Shown here in pieces: positions 33,300 to 58,735 of a stretch of 64,000 nucleotides of DNA. The notes under the pieces are model-generated. The model was not told the origin of the DNA. It did no database searches and was given only the letters and a program-made list of their open reading frames with translations. The DNA comes from Haplodiscus bocki (taxonomy: Eukaryota): assembly GCA_965655095.1 (NCBI GenBank), contig OZ296649.1:72850001-72914000 (forward strand). The letters are read 5' to 3'. The first letter of the stretch is position 1. The number at the start of each line of letters is the position of its first letter. Position numbers and translations under genes: made by a program.

Positions 33300-33920
33300 T
33301 TTAACAATCGCTTGTTTTCGTTCTTTGGATTTTATCTTGAATAGCTCTCGAAATGCGCGGGGCGATTGTTGGGGTTTTAAATTTGCTATTTCTTGGCGTT
33401 GAAAAGGGGGATATCTCTATTGAAAAACAAATTTGCAAAAAGAAGAAACGGCTTTAATTATTTCGTGCAATGTTAAGCAAAAACAGTACAAAATTACAGC
33501 AAAAGAGAGTCACTTACATTTGGCTGATTTATTGTTGAATGATTCTGATCTTTTATTTTCGGTTTCTCCAAGTTGGGTGGTTTCGCGTGCAGGTGTACTT
33601 TTTGTCAGACAGATGCTTTTTTCATAAATACTACATTAATTTTAGAATAATATTTGCGGTAGAGGCAGGTGAAAAGATTTTACAACAAGCGTATAATAAT
33701 AAAGTATACGAGTACTGTGAAAAAAAATATTATTTGCAGGTGAATGTAATATTATTTTACTGCAAAATAGATACAAAAGAAAAAAAAGCACACGCACACT
33801 TAATCAGTTCAGGTGCACTATTGGGACCTGGGACATATTACTCATATTACTCAGCTACAAGTCTTTCAGTTATTGTAACGCAAATGTATTTTTTTTGTTT
33901 TTGTTTTTTTAGTTGTTATA
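33300..33920 (-). repeat. 3' LTR of element A
   Basis: Direct repeat of 44971-45591 (about 20 differences by eye); sense termini TATAAC...TGTTAAA. Confidence 0.93.
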
Positions 33921-33966
33921 TTGGCCCATTTCATCTGGATTCTGTCCGCACAATAGAAACGACTTA

Positions 33967-34943
33967 TCAAAAAGTGTCATGCATCCGCGATAAAAATGTG
34001 TCACAGTCAATGCAGGTTCTGAGGTTCCGTTGAGTACGTCGGATACCATCAATTCCACAACAATTATACACGTTTCGAAGGTGTGGAGTTTGCAGAATAT
34101 TTTTGGTCTCACTAACCACAAAGACAAGAGGTTTAACATAATTAGGGGCATCGGGATTTTTGTCGGGATGTATAAGTTTGAGGATATGGCGAGCATGGAA
34201 AGCTAATTTGTTCCGAAGTAGCATCGAGGGAGCAACCAAGTAGATCGTAGAGCATGGATTCCGCTGCAAATTCAAGGGTGTTGGGATAGGTTGAAATTTG
34301 GCGAAGGAGCATTGTCTTAGGGCCGTTGTAAGATTCAGAGCTGATAGCAGACGTTTTTAAAGAAGAAATCTGTTCCGAGAGTTCTAAGGTCCTTGCGAGG
34401 AGGGCAGAATTTTCTTCATTGAGGACTTGGAGGCGTTTTTGGAGTTCCTGGATTTTTTCTTGTTTGGTACGCAATTCAGCCACGGTTTCTTCCATGACAG
34501 CAAAAGTATTATTCGCGGCTGTTCGAGCCTCTTCAAAACCTTGTTGTAATTTGCGAACATTGCAAAATTCGCTTGCCAACAAGTCCAAAGCTTCGTCCGA
34601 GTCTAGGGTTGCCTCAACGCTCACGTCAATGGTTTCAGGAAGAACAGGAGGGGGCAGGGGCGGGGAACAAAGGCCGTTGGGGGTCGGTTCATTGACATGA
34701 ACACTCATGTTAGAAGTGAGAGGAGGAGTGACCCAGATCTGGCTGGCCGGACGTACAGAGGCACGGTGCTTGGGTGCGTTTATCTTCTTAAGGGTAACAT
34801 TTTGACTGGTCGCATTGATACGAAGAACTCGATACTCGCTGGGGTCCAAGATTTGAACCACGTCACCAGGCGCCAGTTCAACCACGCGACCACTGCTGGT
34901 GAAGAAGGGGGCTTTTCCAAAAGAGAGCGGCACTGTTGAGAAC
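33967..34943 (-). pseudogene. Accessory ORF A: beta-rich N-terminal domain, Pro-rich linker, coiled coil, HPD J-domain, CxxC
   Basis: ORFs 34142..35014 and 33967..34275 join across one frameshift: MLYDLLGCSLDATSEQISF/HARHILKLIHPDKNPD...NILQTPHLRNVYNCCG...CIDC. Homologous to 56888-57879. Confidence 0.85.
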
Positions 34944-35023
34944 CTGAAACAGAAAAAATGAGCACACCTACCGGTGCAAAAAAAGACAAGAAAACGACCA
35001 GGAAAAAAAGACACACAAAAAAA

Positions 35024-35185
35024 GGTGACACGGAAACATGTCTCAAAGGCTCTGATTGAGGGAACTCAAACAGGAAGGAGTAGCTTAGGTAATAGGCGGC
35101 AACGTACGGAAACGCACGTTGAAAGACACTAGCAAAGCTAGGGAAAAACATCAACAGGGTTGAGGAAGTAGCACGGAAACGTGCT
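35024..35185 (-). promoter_or_regulatory. Three UUUC-tetraloop hairpins (putative cis-acting RNA element)
   Basis: Sense strand AGCACG-TTTC-CGTGCT, AACGTGCG-TTTC-CGTACGTT and GACATG-TTTC-CGTGTC. Confidence 0.7.
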
Positions 35186-35378
35186 TAATGACACCAACAA
35201 AAGTTGGGAAAAATAGTGTATGAGCATAAGTCATGTTTTTGGAGGAAATTGTACGGACACGTACAAAAAAAGACATCAACCGAAGTTGAGTAAAACCGTA
35301 GGTGAGCTAAAATGAAGGATGACATGTGTGACAGTATGATGAAAGTTGAATGCATGCATAAAACAAAAATAAACAGTT

Positions 35379-37863
35379 TCAGGTTGAAGTCTGGGCGTAC
35401 TGCGGTGAGGCAATGTCGGGGTAGGCTCGCGGCGGTAGAGCGGGCGCACAAGGAGAAGTGTAGTTCCACGGTTGCGCGTTGGCCTGAGTCATAGTCTCTC
35501 GTGCGAGAGCGACCAGTGCTCGGAACTCATCCGATGTAAGGTACAAAAACGAAGTATCAGTTTTTTCGTAGTCTGCTGGGTTTGATTCGACGATGTGTAT
35601 AAACCGTCCGGAAGTTCCACGGAAGAACTTTTGCGGGTGCCTAAAAAGGCGTTGCCACTGACGACGAAAAAAGGTAAAGCTCAGTGAGAATGTAAGTAAA
35701 GACTTTGAAATAGACAACGTGGACAAGAGAACAGTGGTACGAGTGGGTAGGTAGGATTGCAACGCGGGTGATGTGGCGGGCGTGATGGACGAGTAATAAT
35801 CAGCAATCGGTTTTGTGAGCTCATCGAGAGTGGTTTGCGACATGTGTTGAACATCCGGAAGTTCAGCTAATTCCATTCTGAGACTACATACAACGGATTG
35901 TCGCGCCTCTCCTGTAGAGTATGCTTGAAATTCGGTTGCACCTATGTCAGGGACGCGGGAAAAAACGTTTTGAAGTGATGGAGTAAGTTCGATGGAAGCC
36001 AGAAGGCTCCGGTTGTGTTTCGCAGAAATCCATGTCCGGATGCAAAACAAGATCGCCTTGATTAAACGAAATGATGCTGTTACAGCTGGGTCGCATCACA
36101 CATGCCTGGCACTGGATGGAAGAGATCGAAAGACCATGTGTTTGACTATCATTTTTGATTTGCAGCGTCGCGGTGCGTGAGATTATGTGATACATGCCAT
36201 CCGCAAGATAGAAGGCTTGCGGAGCGTCAGGCAGCAGAACTGAAATGACTTGACAGTTGCGGAGGGCCGGAATATCGTAATTGTAAAAGAGTGAACCTAA
36301 ACAAAGGAGTGTTTCATCTGTTGTTGTGGAAAAACCTTTTCGGCAGAGTTTGATTCGATAGTTCCCGGAACACTGTTGTAGTGTGTGCGATCCAAGCTCA
36401 GCAAACCTCGTGTTATCGGTGGATATTGCGAGAAAAGGATTTGTGAATGTGTACAAGGAGGCTGTTTTCTCGTCATTATTGGGCTGATATAACGGTGTGG
36501 CATTGTATATATCAAATTTTGAAGACTTCGAATTCATTGGTATGCCCAGAATAACGGATATGCCACGATGAATGAGCGTGACCTCTAGGACAAGTTGTAT
36601 TTCGTAATATATTGTCTCAAAACCAGGGCGTATTGCCGGTGACAACTTTGTTCCACGGGTTACTTCGTCATCTGCTAACTCCTTGACAATTTCAGCAATT
36701 TGTTGGGGTAACAAGAATTGTGGTGTGATATAACCACAGGCTAACGACGAGATTGTCGAGAAGAGTGAAAACTTGTAGGCAAAAAAAGCTGCGCGATATG
36801 TTTTCAAATGTGTGTATAGTGTTCCCATTTGGTACACGTAATTCCTGATTGCTTGCAAAAGGTGCATGTGTCGTACAATGACATGGTCACATGCGAGACT
36901 AGTACGGGCCAAGAATAGCGTTGCGTTTACGAGGTAGGATTCCATTTGTTTGAATCGTACGTCCACTACTTCCTTCAACTTGCGAACACTTTCCTGTGTT
37001 CCTTTGATTTCGTTTCCCAGTATGAAGAAATTTTTATCGTTTCTGGTTTGCACACGTTCCAAATTTTTAACAATTGCGTTCTGTGTTCGCATGATGTTGT
37101 CCACATCTCGTGACAGAGCATCGTTGTTTTTACAGAGGTTGAATATTGACAGCGCATTGCATGCAGCATTTTTAAATGGTTCTTCTAGAACTAATCCGGC
37201 GCCGGCTGCCACTGCTGCAATCGCTCCAATAGCTCTGCGTGATCGGCTACCCGGTTTTTGGTCCCTTCGTGCACCGGGCGGAATGAAGGAATTGGCTACG
37301 TCCAATAAACTTTTTTCCTCTTCTAACGCTGCCGTCAGCTCATATTCTAAAAAGCTAACTCTTGTCTCAAGTTGCTGGAGAAGGAGGGCATATGTTTCAT
37401 TGAAATACATATACTTGCAGTTTTTATTGATGTATATGACACCAATTGAGTCAGGGGCCCGTTTGAAAGCTTCAACCATGTATGTTGCTTGGGTCAAGTT
37501 AATTGCCGGAATCCGAGGGAACGGTGAGAAAATACGGACCTTACTCTCGCTCTCGGAGGTAACCGCTTGATATTTGAAAATAAAAGCAGCGCCTTTCTTG
37601 AAGACTGGTTTAGCCAAGTCATCACCCACATGAGTGGTAAATTGCATCTGGAGCTTGATTATGGGCAAGAAGACACTCACTAGTAGAACCGGGAGAATCA
37701 GTTGCTTTATTGAAGCAACTCGTTTGGATTTTTGAGAAGTGCTGAAACAACAACGACGTGGAAGGATTGCGCGGAGATCCTTGAAAGTAGAAAGGAAAAC
37801 AAAAGCTATAAAAATGCGAACAAAAAAAACGTTTAAAAAAGTTGATCGAACCTCTTGGTTCAA
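35379..37863 (-). pseudogene. env: Envelope glycoprotein, class I fusion (F-type); one frameshift
   Basis: Hydrophobic leader, furin site RSRR followed by fusion peptide AIGAIAAVAAGAGLVL, heptad region, Cys-rich domain, TM helix (VLLSTLSISKSLLTFSLSFTFF) and cytoplasmic tail. Confidence 0.9.
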
Positions 37864-39864
37864 AGTTTTGGCTTTGTTTTGCCCTCACGATTGGGGGAAT
37901 TGAAATCCGTAAGATTTGTCGGCAAGTTTGACATTAATAGGGGTTGTGCTCGACGCTGTTGCATCGTCGATGCTCTCAACGTTCGATGTTCTGGTGGTGT
38001 TTGTGAAGCAACGCGAAGCTTCGCGGCGGCTTCATCGATGATTTTTCGTTTGCGAGAACGTCCACCAGGTCGGCTTGTTGGGGTGCTGGGGGAAAACGTT
38101 TTGTTTGACAGTCTTTGAGAAACAGGTGAGCTGGAAGGAATACTAGTTCGATTTTCGATGGATGTTGAAGTCGACGTTGGCGTGATTGGTGTGGTTTGTG
38201 CTGAATTTTGGCCGTACGGGAGTGTCGAGGCAGGTGTGTGTGGGACTGTGACTGTCCCCATCGAGGGTGTTGGTATCGCAGGTATAGGACAAGGTTTTGC
38301 GAGGTTACCACCTGAAGAAGACGTTGCTATTGAAGGTGAAAACTGTTGAAGTAACGGTAAAGATGACCACTCGGTGCAGTAGGTATGATGGATGTCGTTC
38401 TGAGGAGTTGAAGGCCTAGGCGTCCGATTTCGAGTTGGTACATTGGAAGTTGAAGTCGCAGGCTCAGGAGTTTTCTCTCTGGTCGGGATGTTCGTTGTGG
38501 GGGGTCTCCTTCGGAATGGTTTCAAACGATCGTAATGTACCACGGATTCTTTTCCTGTACTGACTTCATTGATTTGATAATTTACGTCATTCAAGCATTT
38601 CAGTATAGTGTAAGGACCACGCCATGGGCTAAAAAACTCGGGACTTTGGCCAATCGGTACCACTGGCGTATGTAAAAGCACTTCTTGTCCGTCTCGGTAG
38701 ATGGGGCCATGTACCTTGTGATTATATATGGCGTTACGCCGTCGCTGATTCTTGTTAAGGTTGTCGCGGACCAACGCAAATGCTAGCTGAAAAGCTTGTT
38801 TTCTCTGATGGACAAACTCATGAACATTATTTGTACAATCGGATTCTGGGCTCGGGAACATGAGATCAAAAGGTAATGAAGTTTCTCGACCATGCACCAA
38901 GAATTGTGGGGTGCATCCTGTGGATTCATGCACCGAGGATCGATATGCCATCATGACGTAAGGGAGTTGTTGTGACCAGTTGTTTTGCTCTGCGTTTATG
39001 CACTTCGCCAGCATGTTTTGGAAGGTGCAGTTCATACGCTCAATGACCGCATTAGACTGATGGTGGAAGGCTGTCGTACGAGACTTGTCTATCCCGAGAA
39101 GAGATAGTAGGTTCTTGAAAAGTAGAGTTTCAAAATTGCGTCCTTGATCACTGTGTATGCTATGTGGACAACCGAAGCGACTAATCCAATGTTCTATCAA
39201 TGCAGTGGCAGTTGTTGATGCCCTCTGGTCCGGTAGTGGTACAGCTTCATACCATTTAGTGAAGTAATCGCCAATCAAGAGGATGACTTTGTGTCCGTTG
39301 GATTCCGGTAACGGTCCCATGAAGTCAATGCCAATGTGGTGGAAGGGATAGCTAGCTTTCCAATCTACAAGAGCATGGCGATGTGTTTTTGGTGGGTTGC
39401 TTCTTTTTCGACAATGGGGACAACGACTGATAAAAAGTTTCACATCTTCTTGGAAACCGGGCCAATAAAATCTTTGCCTAATTTTTTCGGTAACCTTGGC
39501 TACACCTAAGTGTCCACCAGTTGAAGTCGAGTGAGTGGATCTCAAAAGTTCCTCTACCAAACTCTGCGGAACTATTTGTTGAAGAAAAGAAACGCGATCG
39601 TCTGTGGGGTCAAATTTACGAGAAAGTACTCCGTCGGAGATACAAAGGCTGCTAAATTGATTGTAAAGTTGCCAAGCTAGCCGTGGACTACCCTGGAGGT
39701 CGTTGTTTCTTGGTACACGTGACTGTCGAACCCAATCTTTGACCAACTTCAATGATTCGTCTCCATCTTGCGCAATTCGGATATTTTTAGTGAATGAGGT
39801 GTTCGCATGATCAGTCACACTGTTATTGGGGGCGTCTTGTAACTCCGTGGAGTCCAACATATAC

Positions 39865-40275
39865 ACTGTGAGGCGTATTTGCGAAGTTGCGAACTCCTCC
39901 TTTAATACTTTGCGGACTAGGTGCCATTCTAGTTGGTCGACACCACAACCAAGTTTGGGCATGCTGATTGCTTTGACATCATTGTCTTCCGCATGACGTC
40001 GAAGAGCCGCTAGAGACGTTCACAAGGAGCAATATGTTGGTTTGTGGAAAAATTGAAACTTGGTTAGTAGATGGTAGATGTATCGTTGACTTGACTCTAG
40101 AAACTGTGGCCAAAGTGATTTTTGATTCGGAGTGCCAAACTTTGGGTAGTTTGTCGGTTACTTTCGTCGAAAGGTACGGGCGATTCCAGCACTCATCTTG
40201 AAGTCCGAGGAGACACAGTGAGCAAGAGAATCGCTGGAGCTGAAGATATCGTCAACTTTTTCATGGTACCCGAAG
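39865..40275 (-). other. TARG1/OARD1 (Poa1p-like) macrodomain within Pol A
   Basis: DDIFSSSDSLAHCVSSDFKMSAGIARTFRRK...RYIYHLLTK..FFHKPTY...ISMPKLGCGVDQLEW (with two in-frame stops). Confidence 0.88.
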
Positions 40276-42664
40276 GTTTCAACTTCAGTGTACGGATTAG
40301 CCGAGGAAGACGGTTTCCGTGGCTGCGGAGCTTATTGGGGGGTAGTAAGGACTTCAGTTGGTAGCGTGTTAGGGTCAATTCCTGGTTTGGCATTGGGCCA
40401 TTCATCTTCCACCGTTGGCTTGACTTCTGAAAGATCAACCACTTTGGGATCGTGGTGAACTATCAGCACTTCAGCTTGAGGAATGCGGGACAATCCATCG
40501 GCATGTCCAATTGATTTTCCCGGTTTGTGTCGGACCTCGTAGTCAAAGGCGGCCAGTTTCCCGAGCCACCGTGCGGTTAAGCCATCAGGGTCTTTGAAGT
40601 TGTGCAGCCACTGAAGTGCTCGGTGATCCGTAACGATAGTAAACTTGCGACGCAAAAGATAATGTCGAAAATGGCGTGTGAAGTGGACAATTGCCAAAAG
40701 CTCCCGCTTGGTTGCAGAATATCTGGTTTGAGCTTTCGAGAAAGCCGTAGAAGCGTAGCAAATGGCACGTTCTTTGCCATTTTGAACCTGAGCGAGAACA
40801 GCGCCCATTGCAGTCAAGCTTGCGTCTGTGTACAAAATAAAAGGTTCTTTCATTGATGGGAAAGCTAAAATGGGAGTCGTTAGGAGGCGTGCTTGAAGAG
40901 TTTCGAAGGCTGTCTGTGCCTCAGGTGTCCAGCCGAAGGAAGGACTGGACTCGGTTAATTTGTGGAGTGGTCGAGCAATCTCGGCAAAGTTTTCAATATA
41001 ACGGCGGTAATATGAGCAAAGACCCAGAAACGACTTTACTTCTGTTTGACTGGTGGGGATAGGGAATTTTTTTACTGGAGCGATTTTTTCGGGATCTACT
41101 TGTAGACCATCGGCGCTGAGGACATGTCCCAAAAGTGGACTTTTGTTTTGAAGAACTCGCATTTCAGTGGATTTATTTTGAGATTTGCTTCACGAAATCG
41201 TTGGAGTACGACTCGAAGTCTTTCTAAATGCTCCTCAGGGGTTGCGGCAAAGATGATACAATCGTCCAGGTAAGGGACAGTGCTCTTCCACGTCAGACCT
41301 ACAAGGACATGTTCAATTAAACTTTGGAAAGTGTTGGGACTTCCCGTGAGACCCATAGGCATGCGGAGCCATTTGTAAGAGCCAAAAGGGGTGCTAAACG
41401 CTGTGAAGTCTTGGCTCTTTTCCTCCATTGGTAACTGATAAAAGCCCCAGGACATATCAATTGTCGAAAAGAAAGCACTTCCTTCTAATGTGTCGAATAT
41501 TTCTTCAATGGACGGTATGGGCCAACAGGACTTGATGGTTTGTTGATTCAGTTGTCTGTAGTCTATTACTAATCTGAACTTGCCATTTTTCTTTGGGACC
41601 AGCATGGCTGGTGCGCTATACGGACTATGACACGGCGTTATAAGTTCTTTGTCAAGAAACGCGTCTATCTTTTCTCGTAGATCTTGCTTGTAGTGGAGAG
41701 GTAATCTTCGATTCGGTAGTTTGACGGGCTTTGAACCCGGGTAAACATCAGTCTTATGACTTGTGGCATCGCACTCCCCGATGTCCCATTGATTTTTTGA
41801 AAAAACATCTGCGAATTGTTGCATAAGTTCGGCGAATTTATGCCTCATTTTGATGGGTATCGCCGGACTGATTGAGTCTATAACGTGCTTGAGGTCATAC
41901 GACTCATCAATTTCACCTGTTTTTGACTTCGGTGGTGGGGAAACTATGCGGTTCAACGCTTGTTTTGGAAAGATTCAGAGGTACCCAATGTTGTGTTTTC
42001 GTACACCGTAATTACTTCATCCCCGGTATTTTCAATTGTGACCGGTACATTTTCTTCTGCGAAGTTGAAAAGGACGCTGGGGACCACAGCGTTTTTCAAA
42101 GTACTTATTCGTTCCACCGGCTCAAATAGAGCGGGCATTTCCATCAATGGTCGTTGCCATTCTTGTATTCTGGCTGGCAAAATCATGGCATATCCAGCCG
42201 GCACGGAGACTGTTTCCGTCGCTATCACCCGAAAAACTGTGTTCACTTCGTGATTGAGTTTACGGTTATACAATGGTACATGATTCTTGGAATCCAAGCG
42301 AAGCAGATCTTTGGAAAACAAGGCGTCGCATTTGTTAGTCCTCAGGAAGTTGAGTCCCACTAGACACTCTGCTTCCGAATCGATGAGCACGTGAAATTCG
42401 TGCTCGTAGTGTTTAGGACCGATGGTGATCGGTGGGCGAACTGTTCCTCTTGAAGAAATTGGCAGCTTATTTGGAGCCACGAGTTTGGTTTCCGTCGGTA
42501 AAAGTTTCAATTCACCCAATTTTTGGAGCCTATCAAAAACTACTGAGCTGAGGCAAGACACACTTGCTCCACTGTTGCAGACTGCCTCGATGGTTTTACC
42601 GAAAACAGTCAATTTTAGAAACACACTCCTGTGGTCAACCACGGAATTGAGTGTTTGAATTTGT

Positions 42665-43874: not shown

Positions 43875-43909
43875 TTTTATCTCTATTTCTCGTTACAAAA
43901 AAAAATTTT

Positions 43910-44969: not shown

Positions 44970-44970
44970 T

Positions 44971-47791: not shown

Positions 47792-47865
47792 ACTACAATG
47801 TACACCAGTCCTTTAAATTCGCACCTTTCTAACAATAAAAACGATGACGCCGACTGCTAATCATA

Positions 47866-49336: not shown

Positions 49337-51734
49337 ACAACGAACTTTTGGATTAAACTCGGTGGTCGACTCGCGCAGTGTTTTTGTACAACTGAAAATT
49401 TTAGACAAAACAGTGGAAGCAGTATGCGATTGTGGAGCAAGTGTATCTTGTGTGAGCTCTGAGATTTACAATGAACTGAAAAAAACTTATCAAATAACGT
49501 TGAAAAACTGCACCAGAAGCCTGAGAGCGGCAAATGGACTGCCGATTGATGTGAAAGGCATCATCAGAGTACCAGTATATGTGGGGAATAAATTATTCCA
49601 TCACGAATTTCGAGTCTTGGAAAAAGCACAAGCTGACTGTCTTTTAGGTCTGGATTTCTTAGAACGCCATAAATGCGACCCCTTGTTTTCACGAATGGAG
49701 TTAAAACTGGACTCAACCCATGCTGTCCCCCTCTATCACAAAAACTTTGAAAGTGACCACAATGCTATCTTTCGAGTCGTTGCGACCGAAACCATTAAAG
49801 TACCATCAGGCCACGCAACAATTCTTCCAGCACACATCCCAAATTGGAAGAGACCATTTTTCCATCTAAATGCTGTTTTTGAACCTTTGGAGAAATTCAC
49901 TATGAGTGAAGACATCTCAGCTCCCAACATACTTTTTGATTTTTCTGACGAGATGATCCCTGTCATAATGACTAACACAACGGACTCCGAGATCACGATT
50001 TTCAAAATTACAACTCTTGGGTCATCCGAACTTGTATCTGATGAGATTATCAATTTTGTTAGTCGCCCATTGCTAGCCTCCAGCGCACCTCCGGCTGCAG
50101 GATCGGTACAAAACCGGATAGAGTCCTCGAGAAACGACTTGCAAACAGTGATCACCTCAGTTGATCCAACCATTCACCGACAATACCATCAACAATTTGC
50201 TGCACTCTTCAAAGAATTCATGCACGTTTTTTCGTCCTCAGAATGGGACTTAGGTAAGTGCGACGCTACCAGTCACAAAATTGATGTACACCCGGGTTCG
50301 AAACCGATCAAAATTCCTAATCGCCGAATGCCATTGCACTATAAAGAATATTTGCAGTCCAAACGATGTCTTTTTGGAAAAAGACCTGATCGCTCCTTGT
50401 CACAGTCCTTACAGTTCTCCTGCTATGTTAGTGCCAAAGAAAAATGGAAAGTTGCGTCTTGTTATTGATTACCGCCAACTCAACAAGCAGACTGTTAAAT
50501 CCAGTTGGCCGATCCCGTCTATTGAGGAAATCTTCGACACACTGGGCAGAAGTTGTTATTTTTCTACAATTGATATGTCCGCTGGATTTTATCAGGTTCC
50601 CATGCACAGAGACAGCCAAGATTACACTGCATTTAGCACCCCCTTTGGGTCGTTCAAATGGCTGCGAATGCCGATGGGACTAACCGGGAGCCCGAACACT
50701 TTTCAAGGCCTAATGGAACATGTCCTTACTGGCCTTACTTGGAAAACTTGTGTGCCCTATCTCGACGATAGCATCATCTTCTCTACTACCCCAGAGGAAC
50801 ACCTCTCACGTTTACGCCAAGTGTTTCAACGTTTCCAACAGGCTAACTTGAAAATCAATCCTTCGAAATGTGCTTTCTTTCAAACGAAGGTACAATTCCT
50901 TGGGCACATTGTCAGTAAAGATGGACTTCAAGTGGACCCCGAGAAAATCAATGCAGTACTTAAGTTTCCTACGCCCACCAACCAGACACACGTGAAGTCC
51001 TTTTTGGGCTTAGCTTCTTACTATCGCCGCTATGTCAAGGATTTCGCCGAAATCGCTCGACCTTTACACAGAGCAAGTGAAACCTCTTCTGAGTTTCAAT
51101 GGAATGAAGCGGCACAAAATTCTTTTGACTCGTTAAAACATCGTTTGACGACCACTCCAATTTTAGCATACCCGTCACTTCAAAAGCCATTCGTGTTATA
51201 TACAGACGCCAGCCAGCTTGCAATGGGCGCTGTTTTGGCTCAGGAACACGATGGTCTGGAAAGAGCGATCTGTTACGCATCCAAGGCTCTCTCCAAGACC
51301 CAGAGCAAGTACTCAACAATACGCCGTGAGCTTTTGGCCATTGTGACATCCACCCGTCACTTCAGACATTACTTACTGGGACGCCAGTTTACCATTGTAA
51401 CGGATCACCGAGCACTCCAATGGTTGCACAATTTCAAAGATCCTGATAGCATAACTGCCCGTTGGTTGGAAAAGTTGGCGCCTTTTGATTACGATGTTCG
51501 ACATCGTCCAGGAAAGTCAATTGGACATGCTGATGGACTGTCACGAATTCCATCGTCCGTCAATGCAGTAGCAGAAACAAACAACCCTTCATTCCCGTTT
51601 GAAGAACATCTGGGACCCGATGGCTCACCCACCCACCTAACGCCAGCGACAGACGGTAGTTACTATTCTGACCAACATCACATTGATTCTCCCACGGCGA
51701 GTGCCGCGGCACAACAGCAAGATGCAGCAATCGG

Positions 51735-52150
51735 AATTTACCGTGAAACCATCGGAAACCTTTTCGATACCCAAGATTCTTTTGGCCACTGTGTGTCCGC
51801 TGACTTCAAGCTGTCGGCCGGTATTGCGAGAAAAATCCGCCGTAACTACCCTTGTACTTATCGAGCCGGTTGGAATCACAGTACGAATCCCCTTTGGCCA
51901 CAATGGTTGCCTGAATCCAAACGATACATCTACCATCTAGTCACAAAACAGAAGTTCTATCAGAAACCAACTTACGGAACTTTGCGTGCTTCCTTGGAAA
52001 GAATGCGATCGCATGCCGAGAACCATCGCGTTCGCAAAATTAGCTTGCCATGTATCGGATCTGGTCTCGACAAGCTCGAATGGGAGCAAGTACGCCAACT
52101 GATTCGGGAAGTTTTTCGTACTTCCCCTGTTCAAATCACAGTTTTTTTGA
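51735..52150 (+). other. TARG1/OARD1 (Poa1p-like) macrodomain within Pol B
   Basis: IGNLFDTQDSFGHCVSADFKLSAGIARKIR...RYIYHLVTKQKFYQKPTYGTLRASL...ISLPCIGSGLDKLEWEQVRQLIREVF; in frame with RT-RH and IN. Confidence 0.92.
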
Positions 52151-54123
52151 AAGCTTCAGTAGACCCTACGGAGAACGACTGTAACTCCAATTTCAATGAC
52201 AACGCATTGGCACAGGCACAGGAAGCTGATGAAAGCTTACACCAGGTTCGGAAAAGGATTCGAAGCAAACGTGTACACAAAAATGATGAACTGCAAGGAC
52301 TTCCTCGTTTGGGATGGCAAATGTTCAACCAATTATCTAGTCTTCACATCAAAAACAACGTGCTTTGTCGGAAGTTTGAACCACTCGACGGAAATTTGCC
52401 CTTCTTACAACGGATTGTCCTGCACTCCATGGTACCAGAAATTTTGACGGCTTTGCACAGTTCTAAAACCGCTGGTCATTTGGTCACGCACAAAGTCATT
52501 GAAAAAGTGCGTCAACGTTTCTACTGGCCTGAATTTAAGGAAGATGTCAAGCAATTCATACTATGTTGCGATGCCTGTCAAAAGAAGTCTGGACCCCCAA
52601 AGACTAACCGCCATTCCTTAGTTGACTGAAAGATCAGCTACTCCTTCCACCACATTGGTCTCGACTTTCTTGGCCCACTTCCCCTTTCTAATGGCAACCG
52701 CTTTATTCTTGTGATTGGCGACCATTTCACCAAATGGTACGAGGCGATACCTCTGCCGGACCAGCAAGCTTTCACTACTGCCGATGCGCTACTTGAACAC
52801 TGGATTTGCCGTTTTGGATGCCCTAATAGCATTCACACGGACCAAGGCCGTAATTTCGAATCAGCCTTGTTTTAACGCCTGATGACATTGCTCGAAATCA
52901 ATAAGACACGGACTACTTCTTTCCACCCACAGTCAAACTCAGTCATTGAGCGCATGAACCGTACATTACTGAATATGCTCACCAAAAGTATCGACAAACA
53001 ACAAGCTAACTGGTCTTATTTCCTTCCCTTCGTCCTCATGGCCTATCGGTCCTCCGTACACGAATCAACCGGTTTCACTCCGAACCGACTTGGACATGAG
53101 GTTTTGTTTCCTCTCGACTTGATGTATCCGCCTCCCGAAAGCAACGTCCCCACTAACATCAATGAATATGTGATGACACAACAACGGAAATTTCAACAAG
53201 CTTTCGAACTAGTTCGGCGAAATACTACGGCTCAACAACGCCGTCGCAACGCTCTTTACAACAGGAAAGTCCACGGCCCCACATACCGTGCGAACGAATT
53301 TGTCCTTCTCCACTACGATGTCACTGTTACTGGACAAAGTCCGAAACTATCCAGCCCCTGGCGCGGCCCCTACCGCATTTTGAAGTGTATCAACGACGTT
53401 AACTACAAAATTGAAGAACTCTCCACTGGCAAACAGCAAATTGTTCTTTATGATCGCCTCAAACGATACCATGGAACTCCCCCTCTCTCAACGCCAATAC
53501 CGACACGACAATCAGCTCCTGGACCTGCTCAGCAGACGACATCACACCCCTCCTCGACGACCGTCAATCACGATGACTGCGTTGTCTCGTTTATACCTCC
53601 TCCTAATCTCTTTGCTCCCTCACGTGGTTTAGCCACCCGCTTCCAATCCCCACAGACACCACCCCACCCAGAAATGTCACCGTTGATTCTCATGTCACAA
53701 AACCTCTTTCAGCGAGTATAAATGCCTCGACACTTCCCTACGATTTAACGTCTAGCTCCTTGCCATCTCAACCCTCCCTTCCTTGCCATAGTACTACCCC
53801 TTCCAATCAACCCAGGACCCTTCCGTTTGCCAACTCCACGCCTACGAGATCCCCTTCTTCCCGGTGGAGAATATTGTTCGCCGCGCTGCTCGCGAGCTAC
53901 ACAACCGCAGTCCCTCCAACAAACGTACCCTCCGACCTAGCACAGTGACTCAACGAAAGACACAGCCTCTTTTCCGCTCTCGCTTACCCCGCGATCTGAC
54001 GGATTTCCTTTCTCCTCGGAGGCTGACAAAAACAAAGCCTCCTGCTCTGTCTAACCAGCACTAGTACTCTGTCCCAGCCAATACATCAACGCCGAATGAT
54101 TGTATGGTCTTCTCTTTATTTAG

Positions 54124-56488
54124 GAGACACCCCAGCTATATGACGTCAACAACCCCTTTCCTTTTTCTTCCTATTATATTCTCCCTTCTCAACTTCTCTG
54201 CTGTGGTACAGTTCACAACACATTTGAGCGATTCATTGGACGACCCTGTTTTCAAGAAAGGTGCTGCTTTTGTCTTTCAATTTCAGGACGTGACACCGGA
54301 AAGTGAGAGTAAGCTTCGTGTGTTCTCACCGTTACCCAGGATCCCTGATATTAATTTGACCAACGAGCATACGATCCTCCAAAAACGAGGACACTCCGAT
54401 ACCCTTGCAGGAATGACCTCGGTTAAGATGTGCGACACCGCCGACATGGAACACTTATATGACAACTTATTTAATCGACTCGAAGAAAAATTGAGAATTT
54501 TGGAAAACGAAATTCAGGCTGCTCAGACGGATCAACACAATTTGGTGACGATGGCTTCTTCCTTCTTACCGCCGTCGATGCACCCGCATGAAGCGCCATC
54601 ACGAAGCAAACGAGCCATTGGACTCATTGCAGCGGCTGCGGGAGCCGCGGGACTGGCTCTAGGTGACCCAGTCAAAGAGGCTGCATGTTCAGCGCTCTCT
54701 ATTTTTAACCTTTGTACGGATACTACAGATTTGCAAAACGATATTGACGGAATTTTAGCGACTCGAAATCAGTTTCAAGATGTTCTGCAACGCGTTCAAA
54801 CGAAAAACGATGAAAAATTTGTCTTGCTTGATAACGAAATCAAAGACACACAGGACAGTGTAGTCAAGATAACAAAACTCGTGGGCACACAGTTAAAGGC
54901 CCTGGAAACCGAATTGATGGAAATCAAGGGCGTGATAGCCACTTTCCGGTTTGTCATCGACAAATTATACACAGTATGTCTTTCTTGCAACAAATTCGAG
55001 ATTATATTGCCCATTTGGGAACACTGTACGCACATATTAAATCTTATAAAGCCGCTTTTTACGCCTACCAGATTGCGCTCTACTCCACGATTTCGTCACT
55101 GGCCGCTGGGTATGTCAGCCCTCAATTCCTCCTCCCTTCCCAACTGGCCTCCATTGTCAATGAGCTTGCCCATGACGAGATTCTCCATGGCACCAAACTC
55201 TCGCCTGCCATCCATGTGGGCCAGGAAGCCATTTACTATGAACTCCAGATGGTTTTAAAAGTTTCCCTTCTCCCCAAAGGTATTTCAGTTGTCCTTGGCG
55301 TCCCGATGAACTCAAAGCGCAATGTCTATCGCGCCATTCCCTTGTACCAGCCTAACGATGATGGCGATACCGCTTCCTTGTATCACTTCCCAAAACCTCT
55401 TCTAGCCATTTCTACTGACAATTCCCGTTTTGCTGAGCTCGATGCCGCCAGCCTTCAGCAGTGCTCTGGTAATAACCGCATTAAACTCTGTCGTCAAGGT
55501 TTTTCGACCACTACAGACGAAACCTTGCTTTGTTTACCTTCTTTATACTATAACTACGATATACCCGCTCCTCGTAACTGTAAAGTAGAATCTGTCCTTC
55601 TGCCTGACGCTCCCCAAGCTTTTTACTTGGCTGATGGTTTATATCATATTATATCTCGTGACCCTCACATACAGATGAAGAATGACAGTGGCTCTGACTT
55701 TTCTATTTCTACCTTATCTTGTAAAGCTTGCTTGATCCGCCCTAGCTGCAGTAGTACCCTCTCTTTCAATCAAGGTGATTTGGAGCTTCGCCCTGACCTC
55801 GATCTTCTGCAAAACCAAACCCGAACCCTTCTTGGCCAAAATACAGCTTACTCCTTCTCTTGATCAGATCTTTCAGCATGTTCCCCGCACCACCAGTAAC
55901 TTTCACACGTATTCTGTGACGGAAGCGCGTCACTCCGTCCTTAGCAGCGTTCGTTTGGAATTAGCTGAACTCCCTAATGTTAATGCAATGTCCAGCGACT
56001 CCGTTGCTGAGCTGACTAGACCAATCGCTCAATATTATTCTTCCGTCTCTCCGGCAACTTCTGCCGCCTTATCCTCTTATCTCCCCACCCGTACAGCTAT
56101 CTGTTTTTCCGTCGTCTCCATCACCATTTCTCTCCTGACATTCAGTATCAGTTTTACACTCTTCCGTCGCCAATGGAAACGTCTCTTTGCACACCCTCAA
56201 CGGTTTTTCCGTGGTACTTCTGGAAAGTTCTTGCACATCGTGAATGCCCATCCGACTTCACCTGACGCAGACTCTTCTTTCTTGTACCTTTCGGTGCAAG
56301 AGTTTCAGGCCTTGCAGGCTCTTGCCCATGCCACACTCCGTGACCAGACCCCACCTTTAGTCTCCACCAACCCTCCGGCTGCCGCCTTACCCACTCACCC
56401 TCCTACTAACTACTCTCACCCTAACCCCCCACTCACTAGTGTGTATCCTACTGTTACCGTCCCTCTGTACTCAGAAACTTCTACATAA
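54124..56488 (+). pseudogene. env: Envelope glycoprotein, class I fusion (F-type); two frameshifts
   Basis: Acceptor TCTCTTTATTTAG|G at 54123; signal peptide; RSKR followed by AIGLIAAAAGAAGLALG; Cys-rich region; TM helix (AICFSVVSITISLLTFSISFTLF). Confidence 0.9.
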
Positions 56489-56616
56489 CTTGTCATCTCT
56501 CCCGCGTATGTTATATATCTATATCTCTCTCTGTATCTATGTATCTGCATCTCTATCTCCTATTCCTTCTCTATATGTTCTTATGTATTCTCCTCACATC
56601 CTGAGCGATGCCTTCT

Positions 56617-56792
56617 AACGCGTTTCCGCGTTTCCTTTTTCCTCCTCCCGCGCTTGCGTGTGCGCGCCTTGGCATGTTTCCGTGCCTCGGGCTGGCGGTG
56701 CGCTCCGCCCCCACGAGTTACACTGTTCGACACGTTTCCGTGTTTCCCTGCACTAGCCGACTTCTCCTCTTTTCGTCATACGTTTCCGTATG
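56617..56792 (+). promoter_or_regulatory. Four UUUC-tetraloop hairpins (putative cis-acting RNA element)
   Basis: AACGCG-TTTC-CGCGTT, GGCATG-TTTC-CGTGCC, GACACG-TTTC-CGTGTT and CATACG-TTTC-CGTATG, at ~50-58-nt spacing. Confidence 0.75.
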
Positions 56793-56887
56793 CAGCCCCC
56801 CTTTTTTTCTCCTCTCTCGTTGTTTTTTTCTTAGTCGCCTTGTCACTTCTTTCCCTAACTATAATGTATCAAATTTTGTTGTTTCAG

Positions 56888-57879
56888 GTCTCACTTCAAC
56901 TTCTTCAGCACCCACCCTGCCCGCCGCCACCCTGTGTTAACAAGTTCTGGACGCATCCACCCTGTCGCAGTCGGTGACCATGTGTATCTAGTAGAGGACA
57001 TACAATATCGTGTCACCAAGTTGTCCCCCGACAGTGATTCTGTTTGTCTCCAGAAAATAAATTCGCGAGACCGTCCCTTCAAGCGTTCAATCCGCCAAAT
57101 CTGGTTGCCACCACCCATTACCTCTGAATCTTCTGCCTCCGCTGACCTCCCCACTGCAAACTGTTTCTGCCCAGAACCCTCGCCTCCTCCCGTTCTCCCC
57201 GACGTCATGGATACGTCCTTCCAAACTGACATGGACAAAGAGTCAGCTCTCAATGATTGGGTCACCGTCACTACCGACTTTACTTCTGTCACCCAACTGG
57301 ACAAAGCTTTCCAAGATGCCCGACGTGAGGCTGAAGTCTTTTACGATATGTACACTGAAGCGGATTTGGCTGCTGCCTCCGCCCGCAAGCAAATTGAACA
57401 CCTTACAGCCGAATCTCAACAGCTCCGTTCTTCCCTGGATGACTTGAACCGTACCCACAATAGCCTCATGGCTGACTCCCTCCGACATATCAAACGATAT
57501 CAGTTCCCTCCGCACTCAACTAACCTCTTTGGACGGCTCCCACACAAAAGCGTTAGCTTCTATGATCCAACATCATCTCTTATCTCTTCCCACCGATTTT
57601 AACGACCCTGCCACCCCGGATGACACACTTTATCATTTTCTCTGCTGTAACCCTTCCGCCGATATGTCCACCATTGTTCGTCATGCCAACACACTTCTGC
57701 GTTGCCTACATCCTGATAAAACTTCGCCCACTACCGACCACGCCGTAGCTGCCTCTCGTCTTGTTCCCCTCCTTACTAACATCAAACGTGTTTTAACACA
57801 TCCGGGCCTCCGCAAAGTGTATGACCACTGTGGTCTTCTTGGCTTCCGCCGCCTCTTGGACTCTTTCCTTCGTTGCTAA
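56888..57879 (+). pseudogene. Accessory ORF B: beta-rich domain, Pro-rich linker, coiled coil, HPD J-domain
   Basis: Branch point CTAAC (56855) and acceptor TTGTTGTTTCAG|G (56887). ORFs 56934..57602 and 57529..57879: DTLYHFLCCNPSADMSTIVRHANTLLRCLHPDK...KRVLTHPGLRKVYDHCG. Confidence 0.85.
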
Positions 57880-58008
57880 CGTTGCACCCCTTGAGACGCC
57901 GATGACAATTTCACCAAGCAAGGCCGATGCGAATTCCCACAACTCTTCATGCTCTTCTCCACATCTTGATGAATTCTTAATTACAATTGCGCGGACGCAA
58001 TTTCTCGT

Positions 58009-58021
58009 GAAAGGGAGTAGT
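58009..58021 (+). promoter_or_regulatory. Polypurine tract of element B
   Basis: GAAAGGGAGTAGT immediately before the 3' LTR. Confidence 0.7.
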
Positions 58022-58735
58022 TGTAGCGGCCCTGTATGAACCTGTACGAACATTTTGCAAGCAAATACTTGTCATCCACTTCAGATTAATATTGTCATCT
58101 TTTGTCCCCCAGCCCCATAAACAGGCCTCCTTCAAAACAATCATGTCTCAGCTTTGTATTCAATTAGCCAAGTAAACCCACACTTGAAGTGGCAATCTAT
58201 CTTATCATAAACCGTCATTTTCATATGTTATATTATATTCCAGTCTTAACTTGTTGATTTTCACATGCATCTAAACTTAAAACTAGACCTCAATTTGTAA
58301 ACTTTCATGTTAATCTAAACCTGAAACAAACTTGTAAATTATCTTAAAAACGTGAATGCCCCAACATTCTGCTGTTAATTGTAATCCTGTTTAAAACTTG
58401 AATATTCACGAATTCGAAACAAGAAAAAGAAGCAAAAACAGAAAAATTAGCGATCATTGGAACACTGAAACGAAACAAGAAGAAGCTGCTCGCCAGAGAA
58501 GACACAAGAAAGAAAAACTCTGAACAACTGTGATATTCTGCTGATCATCACTAATGTAAGTGATTTGTATTAAACATTAAAGTAAATTCAATCTTAAAGC
58601 AAAATTAGATTTTCTCTTAGAACAATCCCAAAAGAGTACCTAACACATACAACCGTCCTCGCATCCGAAGTTTTGAAAGAAATGAAAACCCTAAACTCTT
58701 GTTGCCAATTTTCCAATAAAATCACGGTTGTTAAA
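58022..58735 (+). repeat. 3' LTR of element B
   Basis: Direct repeat of 45992-46705. Confidence 0.95.

What the first reader, a model, noticed from the sequence alone, without database searches (positions are those of the whole stretch)
33300..58735. Two diverged 'complex retrovirus-like' Ty3/Gypsy elements sharing a six-gene plan with host-manipulation modules
Seen: elements A and B have dissimilar LTR sequences and clearly diverged proteins, yet keep an identical architecture: PPxY membrane microprotein, ORF2, gag, pol with a macrodomain, F-type env, a hairpin array and a J-domain ORF. Established: ordinary Ty3/Gypsy elements carry gag-pol, and errantivirus-type ones add env. Inference: conservation across this divergence implies selection on every accessory module, i.e. 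an invertebrate endogenous virus lineage with accessory genes for budding, ADP-ribosylation reversal and Hsp70 recruitment. I do not know a described element with this combination.
Basis: partly seen in the sequence, partly recalled or inferred. Interest (0 to 1): 0.92.

Follow-up and report, generated by a model that had tools for sequence, protein, structure and literature searches.

The report
Retrovirus-like gypsy elements with accessory genes
Two decayed copies of an envelope-carrying Ty3/gypsy retrovirus-like element sit head to head here; both carry the same unusual extras (an ADP-ribose-removing macrodomain inside Pol, a small PPxY membrane protein, a second small ORF, an RNA hairpin array and a J-domain protein), a set that the papers I could search do not describe.

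Summary
Window 33300-45591 (element A, minus strand) and 45992-58735 (element B, plus strand) are two full-length LTR elements, 12.3 and 12.7 kb. Their LTRs are unrelated, but their proteins are collinear along the whole length (26-79% identity).

Both have this layout: LTR, primer-binding site, ORF1 (PPxY plus one membrane span), ORF2, gag (two CCHC knuckles), pol (PR-RT-RH-macrodomain-IN), env, a roughly 400-nt spacer with four small stem-loops, a 3' ORF (coiled coil plus J domain with HPD), LTR.

- **Macrodomain:** a clear TARG1/OARD1 relative (E 2.5e-24). Its catalytic Lys/Asp pair is kept in B and in 27-28 of 30 family sequences.
- **ORF1 and 3' ORF:** both recur in diverged relatives with their motifs kept.
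- **Hairpin stems:** they covary.
- **Env:** it has the F-like class I layout, but sequence support is weak and the fold model failed.
- **ORF2:** the least supported module.

Both copies are defective, with frame changes and stops in pol, env and the 3' ORF. Intact relatives are abundant in public data.

This is a new variant of the known envelope-carrying Ty3/gypsy kind. The proposed functions (budding or ubiquitin-ligase recruitment, ADP-ribosylation reversal, Hsp70 recruitment, RNA export) are inferences. Repbase, Dfam and GyDB could not be searched.

The parts
33300..45591 (-). Element A, full-length LTR element (12,292 bp), defective copy
   Evidence: LTR pair 96.8% identical, flanking GAAA/GAAG; domain content
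44971..45591 (-). A: 5' LTR (621 bp)
33300..33920 (-). A: 3' LTR (621 bp)
44951..44969 (-). A: primer-binding site, starts TGG one base after the LTR; close to B's
44336..44590 (-). A: ORF1, 84 aa, PPxY then one hydrophobic span; open
43910..44302 (-). A: ORF2, 130 aa, no known domain; open; 21-member 90% cluster, most members exactly 130 aa
42717..43874 (-). A: gag, 385 aa, Retrotrans_gag (E 7.4e-4, below the curated cut-off) plus two CCHC knuckles; open
42720..42726 (-). A: canonical -1 slippery heptamer at the end of gag; pol is open in the -1 frame
   Evidence: downstream fold not significant
37860..42729 (-). A: pol (PR-RT-RH-macro-IN), broken: 2 frame changes and 4 premature stops against the nearest intact relative
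39861..40259 (-). A: macrodomain region of pol (placed by homology to B; interrupted in this copy)
35379..37647 (-). A: env, broken: 1 frame change; 95% identical to an intact 828-aa relative
35024..35267 (-). A: array of four small stem-loops in the env / 3' ORF spacer, with a second hairpin type interleaved
33967..34943 (-). A: 3' ORF (N-terminal region, coiled coil, J domain), preceded by a pyrimidine tract and CAG|G; broken: 1 frame change
34030..34230 (-). A: J-domain part of the 3' ORF, HPD present
45992..58735 (+). Element B, full-length LTR element (12,744 bp), defective copy
   Evidence: LTR pair 99.2% identical, 4-bp duplication AAAG; domain content
45992..46705 (+). B: 5' LTR (714 bp)
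58022..58735 (+). B: 3' LTR (714 bp)
46707..46726 (+). B: primer-binding site
47105..47356 (+). B: ORF1, 83 aa, PPxY then one hydrophobic span; open
47423..47791 (+). B: ORF2, 122 aa; open
47866..49284 (+). B: gag, 472 aa, Retrotrans_gag plus two CCHC knuckles; open; one PPxY just before the knuckles
49221..54064 (+). B: pol (PR-RT-RH-macro-IN), broken: at least 2 frame changes and 2 premature stops
51745..52146 (+). B: TARG1/OARD1-like macrodomain between RNase H and integrase, uninterrupted, catalytic Lys and Asp present
54104..56488 (+). B: env, broken: 2 frame changes; 91% identical to an intact 784-aa relative
56615..56795 (+). B: array of four small stem-loops in the env / 3' ORF spacer
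56888..57966 (+). B: 3' ORF, preceded by a pyrimidine tract and CAG|G; broken: 1 frame change and 2 stops; 92% identical to an intact 344-aa relative
57628..57825 (+). B: J-domain part of the 3' ORF, HPD present

Best explanation
The region holds two defective proviral copies, inserted head to head 400 bp apart. They belong to two diverged subfamilies of one family of envelope-carrying Ty3/gypsy (Metaviridae, errantivirus-like) LTR retroelements of an unidentified, probably invertebrate, host.

**Shown by sequence:**
- LTRs, target-site duplication and primer-binding site.
- gag with two zinc knuckles.
- pol open in the -1 frame relative to gag, with a canonical slippery heptamer in A.
- pol order PR-RT-RH-macrodomain-IN.
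- An env whose intact relatives have a furin-type R-x-K/R-R site directly followed by an Ala/Gly-rich hydrophobic peptide, a long helix and a C-terminal membrane anchor.
- A 3' ORF ending just before the 3' LTR.

**Inferred way of working:**
- The element replicates like a retrovirus, with env (and probably the 3' ORF) made from spliced RNAs.
- The TARG1/DarG-class macrodomain, delivered as part of Pol, removes ADP-ribose that host PARP-type enzymes put on element proteins or nucleic-acid ends.
- ORF1 is an N-in, single-pass membrane protein. Its cytosolic PPxY recruits Nedd4-type ubiquitin ligases, either to drive ESCRT-dependent budding in trans or to down-regulate host membrane proteins.
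- The 3' ORF protein oligomerises through its coiled coil and brings Hsp70 through its J domain.
- The four covarying stem-loops are a cis-acting RNA element. They lie upstream of the acceptor-like site, so they would be absent from a spliced 3' ORF message. The leading guess is that this protein or a host export factor binds them, in the manner of Rev/RRE or Cer1 CERV.
- ORF2 has no assignable function.
For: - **Structure of the elements:**
- **Core domains:**
- **Collinearity of A and B:**
- **Frameshift signal:**
- **Macrodomain:** PDB TARG1/OARD1 E 2.5e-24 over residues 69-202 of the queried region; NCBIfam DarG E 1.5e-11. The residues aligned with TARG1 Lys84 and residue 125 (dyad named in PMC7050489; positions counted on the alignment) are Lys in 28/30 and Asp in 27/30 sequences (B plus 29 relatives at 50-92% identity). 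One intact relative, P0169 (1302 aa, 137 members), has PR-RT-RH-Macro-IN.
- **ORF1:** a profile search found 12 clusters, 8 below 1e-10. All 8 have PPxY and a strong hydrophobic 19-mer.
- **3' ORF:** intact relatives are single ORFs of 344-375 aa. HPD always sits in the same context. J-domain hits came independently for A and B. A confident coiled coil and a helix-HPD-helix arrangement appear in the model.
- **Env:** 103 relatives, many intact at 750-830 aa. Furin site plus fusion-peptide-like segment plus membrane anchor. Weak Baculo_F (E 0.0019, 2 of 24 members) and PDB 'fusion protein' (E 0.013).
- **Hairpins:**. All non-Watson-Crick cells in the six inner pairs are G-U on the sense strand (4 versus 0 A-C), which favours RNA over duplex DNA. 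RNA folding z-scores are -3.1 (B) and -6.4 (A).
- **Acceptor-like site before the 3' ORF in both:**
Against: - Both window copies are broken in pol, env and the 3' ORF, so nothing here is a working element.
- J-domain matches stay below Pfam's curated cut-off, and a whole-protein profile did not strengthen them.
- Both AlphaFold models were poor (pLDDT 42 and 50). The fold search gave no significant match.
- F-type env is not established by fold.
- ORF2 similarity is marginal.
- Donor-like sites occur at about chance frequency, and no RNA data exist, so the splicing model is unproven.
- The frameshift stem-loop is no more stable than shuffled sequence, and B has no canonical heptamer.
- Synonymous sites between A and B are saturated, so selection cannot be quantified.
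- The host was not identified.
Confidence: 0.8

Rival explanations
1. The accessory parts are passengers: host gene fragments (OARD1-like, DnaJ-like) picked up by one lineage, plus chance small ORFs. They drift neutrally and do nothing for the element.
For: Both window copies are decayed. ORF2 similarity is marginal. The accessory ORFs are the fastest-evolving parts, with the highest pN/pS of 0.57-0.67. J-domain scores fall below the curated cut-off.
Against: The modules sit at the same places in two subfamilies whose LTRs no longer align. The catalytic dyad is kept in 27-28 of 30 macro sequences. PPxY and the membrane span are kept in 8 clusters that are under 50% identical. HPD is kept wherever the frame survives. 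Frames of 83-130 codons stay open in both copies and in most cluster members.
Confidence: 0.1
2. The hairpin array works at the DNA level, as a cluster of binding sites for a host transcription factor or insulator protein (as the Su(Hw) sites do in Drosophila gypsy; from my own knowledge). It is not an RNA element.
For: The units share six invariant central columns. They are spaced 48-80 nt apart in a non-coding spacer.
Against: The stems differ in sequence between units yet stay complementary: 5 of 7 pairs have changes on both sides, and 0 of 500 shuffles reach the covariation score. A duplex DNA site does not need that. All four non-Watson-Crick cells are G-U on the sense strand, with no A-C. 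RNA folding z-scores are -3.1 and -6.4.
Confidence: 0.12
3. ORF1 is not a budding factor. It is a Nedd4-ligase adaptor that removes host surface proteins (receptor interference or immune evasion), as PPxY membrane proteins of herpesviruses do (UL56, LMP2A; from my own knowledge).
For: ORF1 is a separate membrane protein, not part of Gag. B's Gag has its own PPxY. Basic residues lie before the span, and a short Cys-containing tail follows it.
Against: A's Gag has no PPxY, P(T/S)AP or YPxL motif, so a late-domain function supplied in trans would fit A. Sequence alone cannot separate the two roles.
Confidence: 0.35
4. The frame changes are sequencing or assembly errors, and one or both copies are in fact intact and recently active.
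For: B's LTRs are 99.2% identical, so the copy is young, yet it shows at least 5 frame changes. Indel errors are typical of some long-read assemblies.
Against: Both copies also carry premature stop codons, 4 each, which indel errors do not explain. A's LTRs differ by 3.2%. A shorter public contig holds identical gag and ORF2 products, but that does not test the broken genes.
Confidence: 0.15

Closest known systems
Envelope-carrying Ty3/gypsy 'errantiviruses' of metazoans with F-type env (Chary & Hayashi, eLife 2026, PMC13524379)
   Same: LTR, gag, pol and env layout. Env has a furin site, a hydrophobic fusion peptide and a C-terminal anchor. Many near-identical copies per genome. [quoted passage not shown]
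   Different: That paper never mentions a macro domain, DnaJ or J-domain, PPxY or accessory genes. The bridge-region structures it describes are RNase H-like or 'mini' domains. Here that region holds a TARG1-like macrodomain, and there are three extra ORFs and a hairpin array.
[quoted passage not shown] 2009, as cited in PMC4977317)
   Same: A reverse-transcribing element of animals that carries a macro domain.
   Different: Those belong to Retroviridae, not Ty3/gypsy, and the macro domain is an additional ORF. Here it is fused inside Pol between RNase H and integrase. I did not see their sequences.
Human TARG1/OARD1 (C6orf130) and bacterial DarG (ALC1-like macrodomain hydrolases)
   Same: Best sequence matches: E 2.5e-24 and 1.5e-11. 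The Lys/acidic catalytic dyad is aligned and kept.
   Different: Those are free-standing cellular proteins or antitoxins. Here the domain is embedded in a retroelement polyprotein. Activity was not tested.
Macrodomains of positive-strand RNA viruses (alphavirus nsP3, coronavirus nsp3, hepatitis E virus)
   Same: A macrodomain inside a replicase polyprotein, understood to reverse host antiviral ADP-ribosylation (abstracts of PMC5288732 and PMC7468284).
   Different: By my own knowledge those are MacroD-type. Here the class is ALC1/TARG1-like, and the carrier is a reverse-transcribing element.
CERV of the C. elegans Ty3/gypsy element Cer1 (PMC10309623)
   Same: An accessory protein of an LTR retrotransposon, made from a spliced mRNA with TTTCAG-type acceptors. 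It has a dimerisation zipper and is needed for export of unspliced genomic RNA. This is the model for the 3' ORF plus hairpins.
   Different: No sequence similarity was tested or seen. CERV has no J domain, and no hairpin array is reported for it. The export role here is a guess.
Bdelloid rotifer LTR retrotransposons (Vesta, Juno, TelKA) with diverse extra ORF3s (PMC5408684)
   Same: Ty3/gypsy-like elements that add modules: paramyxovirus-like F env, small transmembrane ORFs, coiled-coil ORFs and enzymes.
   Different: Their extras are dUTPase, GDSL lipase and DEDDy exonuclease. The paper does not mention macro, DnaJ or PPxY.
Viral J-domain proteins (polyomavirus T antigens) and PPxY membrane adaptors (herpesvirus UL56, EBV LMP2A) - from my own knowledge, not retrieved by any tool
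   Same: Viruses using an HPD J domain to engage Hsc70, and PPxY membrane proteins to engage Nedd4-family ligases.
   Different: These are unrelated viruses and no homology is implied. They serve only as functional analogies.

Membership tests
Ty3/gypsy (Metaviridae) LTR retroelement | Direct LTRs with a short target-site duplication | tested here: met
   621-bp and 714-bp LTR pairs; 4-bp duplication, exact for B and 3 of 4 for A
Ty3/gypsy (Metaviridae) LTR retroelement | Pol domain order PR-RT-RH-IN (integrase after RT) | tested here: met
   gag-asp_proteas, RVT_1, RT_RNaseH, Integrase_H2C2, rve, Integrase_p58_C, in that order
Ty3/gypsy (Metaviridae) LTR retroelement | RT/IN phylogeny inside the Ty3/gypsy clade | not tested
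   No reference set (GyDB, Repbase, Dfam) was on hand. Fetching reference elements of animals was not open to me.
Env-carrying Ty3/gypsy ('errantivirus' sensu PMC13524379), F type | Third large ORF after pol with signal peptide, furin site, hydrophobic fusion peptide and C-terminal membrane anchor | tested here: met
   on intact relatives 91-95% identical to the window copies. A signal-like N-terminus is seen in P0017 and P0111.
Env-carrying Ty3/gypsy ('errantivirus' sensu PMC13524379), F type | Ectodomain with the F-protein fold | tested here: inconclusive
   AlphaFold model pLDDT 42. Foldseek found no match at E<=0.001. Sequence hints only: Baculo_F E 0.0019 in 2 of 24 members; PDB 'fusion protein' E 0.013, or 0.08 with a profile.
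ALC1-like / TARG1 macrodomain hydrolase | Significant sequence similarity across the macro fold | tested here: met
   E 2.5e-24, 134 residues aligned; DarG E 1.5e-11; Pfam Macro above the cut-off
ALC1-like / TARG1 macrodomain hydrolase | Catalytic Lys84 and acidic residue 125 (human numbering) | tested here: met
   present in B; Lys 28/30 and Asp 27/30 across B plus 29 relatives
ALC1-like / TARG1 macrodomain hydrolase | ADP-ribosyl hydrolase activity | not testable with these tools
   Biochemical property
J-domain (DnaJ/Hsp40) protein | HPD tripeptide between helices II and III | tested here: met
   In the model, HPD lies between helices 244-258 and 267-287.
J-domain (DnaJ/Hsp40) protein | Score at or above Pfam's DnaJ gathering threshold (27.8 bits) | tested here: not met
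   21.4 bits (B), 16.5 bits (A), 15-18 bits in relatives. PDB J-domain hits E 0.001-0.003. For this reason I call it J-domain-like, not a proven member.
J-domain (DnaJ/Hsp40) protein | Four-helix J fold; stimulation of Hsp70 ATPase | tested here: inconclusive
   The helix pattern fits, but pLDDT is 46-58 in that part. Activity is not testable here.
PPxY late-domain / Nedd4-adaptor proteins | Accessible PPxY motif | tested here: met
   Motif accessibility (cytosolic side) is inferred from basic residues before the span.
PPxY late-domain / Nedd4-adaptor proteins | Binding of WW-domain ligases; effect on particle release | not testable with these tools
   Interaction and cell-biological property
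Rev/RRE-type or CERV-type RNA export module | Structured cis RNA element kept in unspliced RNA and removed from the regulator's own spliced mRNA | tested here: inconclusive
   Covarying stem-loops lie just upstream of an acceptor-like site in both elements. There are no RNA data, and donor-like sites occur at chance frequency.
Known RNA families (Rfam 15) | Match of the hairpin region to any covariance model | tested here: not met
   no match, even at E<=1

The most novel reading that the evidence does not exclude
A lineage of animal Ty3/gypsy 'retroviruses' that evolved a complex-retrovirus-like gene set of its own. Its parts would be:
- a TARG1/DarG-class ADP-ribose eraser built into Pol, which would mean that host ADP-ribosylation restricts retroelements in this host;
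- a spliced coiled-coil/J-domain regulator acting on a multi-hairpin RNA element, working like Rev/RRE but with Hsp70 recruitment;
- a tail-anchored-like PPxY protein that supplies ESCRT or Nedd4 access in trans.
Probability: 0.3. Interest if true: 0.85.

Novelty: new variant of a known kind. Interest (0 to 1): 0.62.

Why it matters
Envelope-carrying Ty3/gypsy elements are now known to be old and widespread in animals, but they are described as simple gag-pol-env elements. A family that also keeps a catalytically equipped macrodomain in Pol, a J-domain protein, a PPxY membrane protein and a structured RNA array would be new in two ways.

First, it would show that accessory-gene 'complexity' arose outside the vertebrate retroviruses.

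Second, it would point to specific host pressures on retroelements in invertebrates: ADP-ribosylation, chaperone dependence, and ubiquitin-ligase or ESCRT access. These pressures have so far been studied mainly for RNA and DNA viruses of vertebrates.

The many intact relatives in public data make this testable by sequence, structure and expression surveys alone.

Tried and rejected
- **Env fold:** AlphaFold2 on a 24-sequence alignment gave pLDDT 42. A Foldseek search of PDB with it gave no match at E<=0.001. Pneumovirus F post-fusion chains appear among the insignificant hits, which I do not count as evidence. An env profile against PDB did not improve the 'fusion protein' hit.
- **3' ORF fold:** pLDDT 50. 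A whole-protein profile against PDB was dominated by coiled coils.
- **N-terminal part of the 3' ORF protein as a copy of the integrase SH3-like domain:** no similarity.
- **NCBIfam on ORF1 and ORF2:** nothing. Pfam on ORF1, ORF2 and the env pieces: nothing.
- **Rfam on the whole window and on the arrays at E<=1:** nothing. No tRNA genes in the window.
- **dN/dS between A and B:** synonymous sites are saturated.
- **Frameshift-stimulating structure:** folding energy is no better than shuffled sequence.
- **Host identity:** An exact look-up of a flanking non-element ORF found nothing.
- **PDB entry codes as paper search terms:** irrelevant papers only.
- **Rejected: ORF1-ORF2 read-through.** Two stops separate them in both elements, and each ORF2 has its own ATG.
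- **Rejected: a programmed frameshift inside the 3' ORF.** Intact relatives read straight through.

- I stopped, used it in no tool, and make no claim about the primer tRNA.
- My scripts printed the bounds of stop-free reading-frame pieces and of piecewise matches. In my reasoning I worked through the reading frames and bounds of the stop-free pieces one by one, which comes to listing where the breaks fall. My references to pieces in several tool calls show the same bounds. The places of breaks could be inferred from these. I have not listed them in the notes or this report.

Full report
**What is there**

Self-comparison of the window shows two pairs of long direct repeats.
- 33300-33920 with 44971-45591: 621 bp, 96.8% identical.
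- 45992-46705 with 58022-58735: 714 bp, 99.2% identical.

Each pair bounds one element.
- Element A (33300-45591) has its genes on the minus strand.
- Element B (45992-58735) has its genes on the plus strand.

The two lie head to head, 400 bp apart. B is flanked by an exact 4-bp duplication (AAAG); A is flanked by GAAA/GAAG. One base after each 5' LTR comes a primer-binding site that starts with TGG and is similar in the two elements.

The LTRs of A and B do not align with each other. At the DNA level only patches of gag, pol and env match, at 70-79%. The window has no N runs, and I saw nothing human-like in it.

**Shared plan**

I compared the stop-free pieces of each element piece by piece and never joined them. 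The comparison is collinear from end to end.

| Part | A-B protein identity |
|---|---|
| ORF1 | 32% |
| ORF2 | 26% |
| gag | 43% |
| PR | 47% |
| RT | 57-79% |
| RNase H | 71% |
| macro region | 47-49% |
| IN | 48-75% |
| env | 46-66% |
| 3' ORF | 30-34% |

Pfam gives the following:
- Retrotrans_gag, above the curated cut-off in B and below it in A (E 7.4e-4);
- two CCHC knuckles in gag, found by motif scan in both, with Pfam zf-CCHC also hitting A;
- aspartic protease, above the cut-off in B only;
- RVT_1, RT_RNaseH, Integrase_H2C2 and Integrase_p58_C in both, and rve in A.

The domain order is that of Ty3/gypsy.

In both elements pol is open in the -1 frame relative to gag. A has a canonical slippery heptamer seven bases before the gag stop; B has none under the strict rule. 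The sequence downstream is similar in the two, but it folds no better than shuffled sequence.

**Macrodomain**

B has an uninterrupted macrodomain between RNase H and integrase.
- Pfam Macro: E 1.7e-5, above the cut-off.
- Solved structures: human TARG1/OARD1/C6orf130 at E 2.5e-24 over about 134 residues.
- NCBIfam: the DarG antitoxin at E 1.5e-11.

Both named matches belong to the ALC1-like class. Its catalytic dyad is Lys84 plus the acidic residue 125 (PMC7050489).

I counted positions on the alignment. B has Lys and Asp at those two columns. Across B plus the 29 relatives that cover the domain (50-92% identical to B), the columns hold Lys in 28 of 30 and Asp in 27 of 30.

Database relatives include an intact 1302-aa Pol with PR-RT-RH-Macro-IN that stands for 137 sequences. 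In A the same region is homologous but interrupted.

**ORF1 and ORF2**

ORF1 is 83 aa in B and 84 aa in A. Both begin with a conserved N-terminal motif, then have PPxY, then basic residues, then one strongly hydrophobic span and a short Cys-containing tail.

A profile of the two ORF1s, searched against 1.84 billion cluster representatives, found 12 clusters, 8 of them below 1e-10. All 8 keep PPxY and the span. Of the four weak ones, two match only the hydrophobic part and two have a degenerate motif.

A's Gag has no PPxY, P(T/S)AP or YPxL motif. B's Gag has one PPxY.

ORF2 is 122 aa in B and 130 aa in A. It is open in both and starts at its own ATG after two stops. The two share only 26% identity over 91 residues (E 3e-4), and there is no family match. 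A's ORF2 sits in a 90%-identity cluster of 21 sequences, most of them exactly 130 aa. ORF2 is real as a conserved open frame, but it is the weakest module.

**Env**

The env pieces have 103 database relatives. Many are intact at 750-830 aa and sit in clusters of 40 to 188 sequences. None carries a name.

Intact relatives 91-95% identical to the window copies show:
- a hydrophobic N-terminus;
- an R-x-K/R-R site followed at once by an Ala/Gly-rich hydrophobic 25-mer;
- a long helix;
- a membrane anchor about 100 residues from the C-terminus.

This gives a small N-terminal and a large C-terminal subunit. That is the layout PMC13524379 describes for F-type env of metazoan Ty3/gypsy elements.

Direct evidence for the F fold is weak:
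- Baculo_F at E 0.0019 in 2 of 24 family members;
- a PDB 'fusion protein' at E 0.013, not improved by a profile;
- a failed structure model and an empty fold search.

**Hairpin array and 3' ORF**

Between env and the 3' ORF lies about 400 nt without coding similarity. It contains four small stem-loops per element.

All seven exact matches to the degenerate 11-nt unit pattern in the whole 64 kb lie in these two arrays, on the sense strand of each element.

I aligned the eight units. The six inner pairs are always paired. Overall 89% of cells are paired, five of seven pairs change on both sides, and no shuffle out of 500 reaches the covariation score. Slid registers collapse to 18-55% paired.

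The only non-Watson-Crick cells in the inner pairs are four G-U on the sense strand, which speaks for RNA. The regions fold better than shuffled sequence (z -3.1 for B and -6.4 for A). A has a second, interleaved hairpin type. Rfam has no match.

Directly after the array, both elements have a pyrimidine tract ending in CAG|G, followed by the conserved start of the 3' ORF protein.

In intact relatives this is one ORF of 344-375 aa. It has:
- a short beta-rich N-terminal part of unknown kind;
- a confidently predicted coiled coil;
- a C-terminal domain that matches J domains.

For the J domain, Pfam DnaJ covers the whole profile at E 2.7e-4 in B and part of it at E 9e-3 in A. PDB J-domain proteins are the best hits for B and are all twelve hits for A. 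HPD is present in both and in 9 relatives, always in the same context.

The scores stay below Pfam's cut-off. I therefore treat it as J-domain-like, with good but not conclusive support.

**State of the copies**

Counts are against the nearest intact relatives, and only counts and outer bounds were kept.

| Gene | Element A | Element B |
|---|---|---|
| pol | 2 frame changes, 4 premature stops | at least 2 frame changes, 2 stops |
| env | 1 frame change | 2 frame changes |
| 3' ORF | 1 frame change | 1 frame change, 2 stops |
| ORF1, ORF2, gag | open | open |

Neither copy could code for a full set of proteins. Some frame changes in the young copy B could be assembly errors; the stops are less likely to be.

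**How it most likely works**

Shown: this is a Ty3/gypsy-type element with env and with the listed modules.

Inferred: it has a retrovirus-like cycle with spliced messages for env and the 3' ORF.
- The Pol-borne macrodomain would remove ADP-ribose placed by host PARP-type enzymes on element proteins or on nucleic-acid ends. The TARG1/DarG class acts on both (PMC7050489).
- ORF1 would present PPxY on the cytosolic face of a membrane to Nedd4-type ligases. That would serve either budding or removal of host surface proteins.
- The 3' ORF protein would oligomerise and recruit Hsp70.
- The hairpins would be a cis RNA signal kept in unspliced RNA. They may be bound by that protein or by an export factor, as in Rev/RRE or Cer1 CERV (PMC10309623).

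I have no function to offer for ORF2.

**Comparison with what is known**

Env-carrying Ty3/gypsy elements with F-type env are known across animals (PMC13524379). That paper never mentions macro, DnaJ or J-domain, PPxY or accessory genes, and it describes only RNase H-like or 'mini' domains between RNase H and integrase.

Macro-domain extra ORFs are reported in fish epsilon-like endogenous retroviruses. Other extra ORFs are reported in bdelloid rotifer and plant elements, and Cer1 has the spliced regulator CERV.

None of my searches for macro or J domains together with LTR retrotransposons found a described element of this kind. Repbase, Dfam and GyDB were not available, so the novelty claim is limited to the library I could search.

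**Verdict**

This is a new variant of a known kind, of solid interest to people who study retroelements and host defence. The functional reading still needs expression, selection and structure data.

I left two steps to others: fetching DNA of related copies, and looking up the elements' own products to find the host.

I also declare slips:
- a tRNA sequence recalled from memory during my reasoning, which I did not use;
- script output and piece references, and reasoning in which I went through piece frames and bounds, from which break places could be inferred.

Noticed in passing
window 25108-28950, minus strand: Neighbouring ORFs match Pfam DNA_pol_B_2 (organellar/viral type B polymerase, E 6.7e-11) with an Endonuclease VII-like stretch, and a C2H2 zinc finger. 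This looks like a piece of a different mobile element of the protein-primed polymerase kind (Maverick/Polinton-like?).
   Followed up: partly
window 17597-18307, plus strand: An ORF with a weak NB-ARC match (E 1.4e-4, below the cut-off), possibly part of a host NLR-type gene. Its exact product is not on record in the public collection.
   Followed up: partly
window 63271-63646: A tandem repeat with a unit of about 102 bp. Three good copies (89-100% identical) are followed by degenerate ones.
   Followed up: no
window 45592-45601 and 58736-58745: The sequence just to the right of A and just to the right of B starts with a similar A-rich 9-10-mer, although A is inverted relative to B. This could be chance or a target preference. 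The 400-bp spacer and B's right flank do not otherwise align.
   Followed up: no
window 35120-35215, minus strand (element A): A second kind of small hairpin, with covarying stems and shared flanks, is interleaved with the main units in A only (family D1).
   Followed up: partly
window 34000-58000: The sense strand of both elements is richer in C than in G. The effect is strongest at the 3' end of B (GC skew -0.36 at 56-58 kb). GC content is 0.44-0.50 inside the elements against 0.35-0.40 outside.
   Followed up: no
window 45188 (A LTR) and 46526 (B LTR): Both LTRs, otherwise unalignable, contain the same 9-nt donor-like string about two thirds of the way along. Donor-like hexamers occur at roughly chance frequency, so this may mean nothing.
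   Followed up: no
public protein collection (no window coordinates): Identical gag and ORF2 products of both elements are on record on one public contig of 19,680 bp. The same locus therefore exists in another public assembly. One ORF2 relative comes from a JGI/IMG metagenome contig.
   Followed up: no
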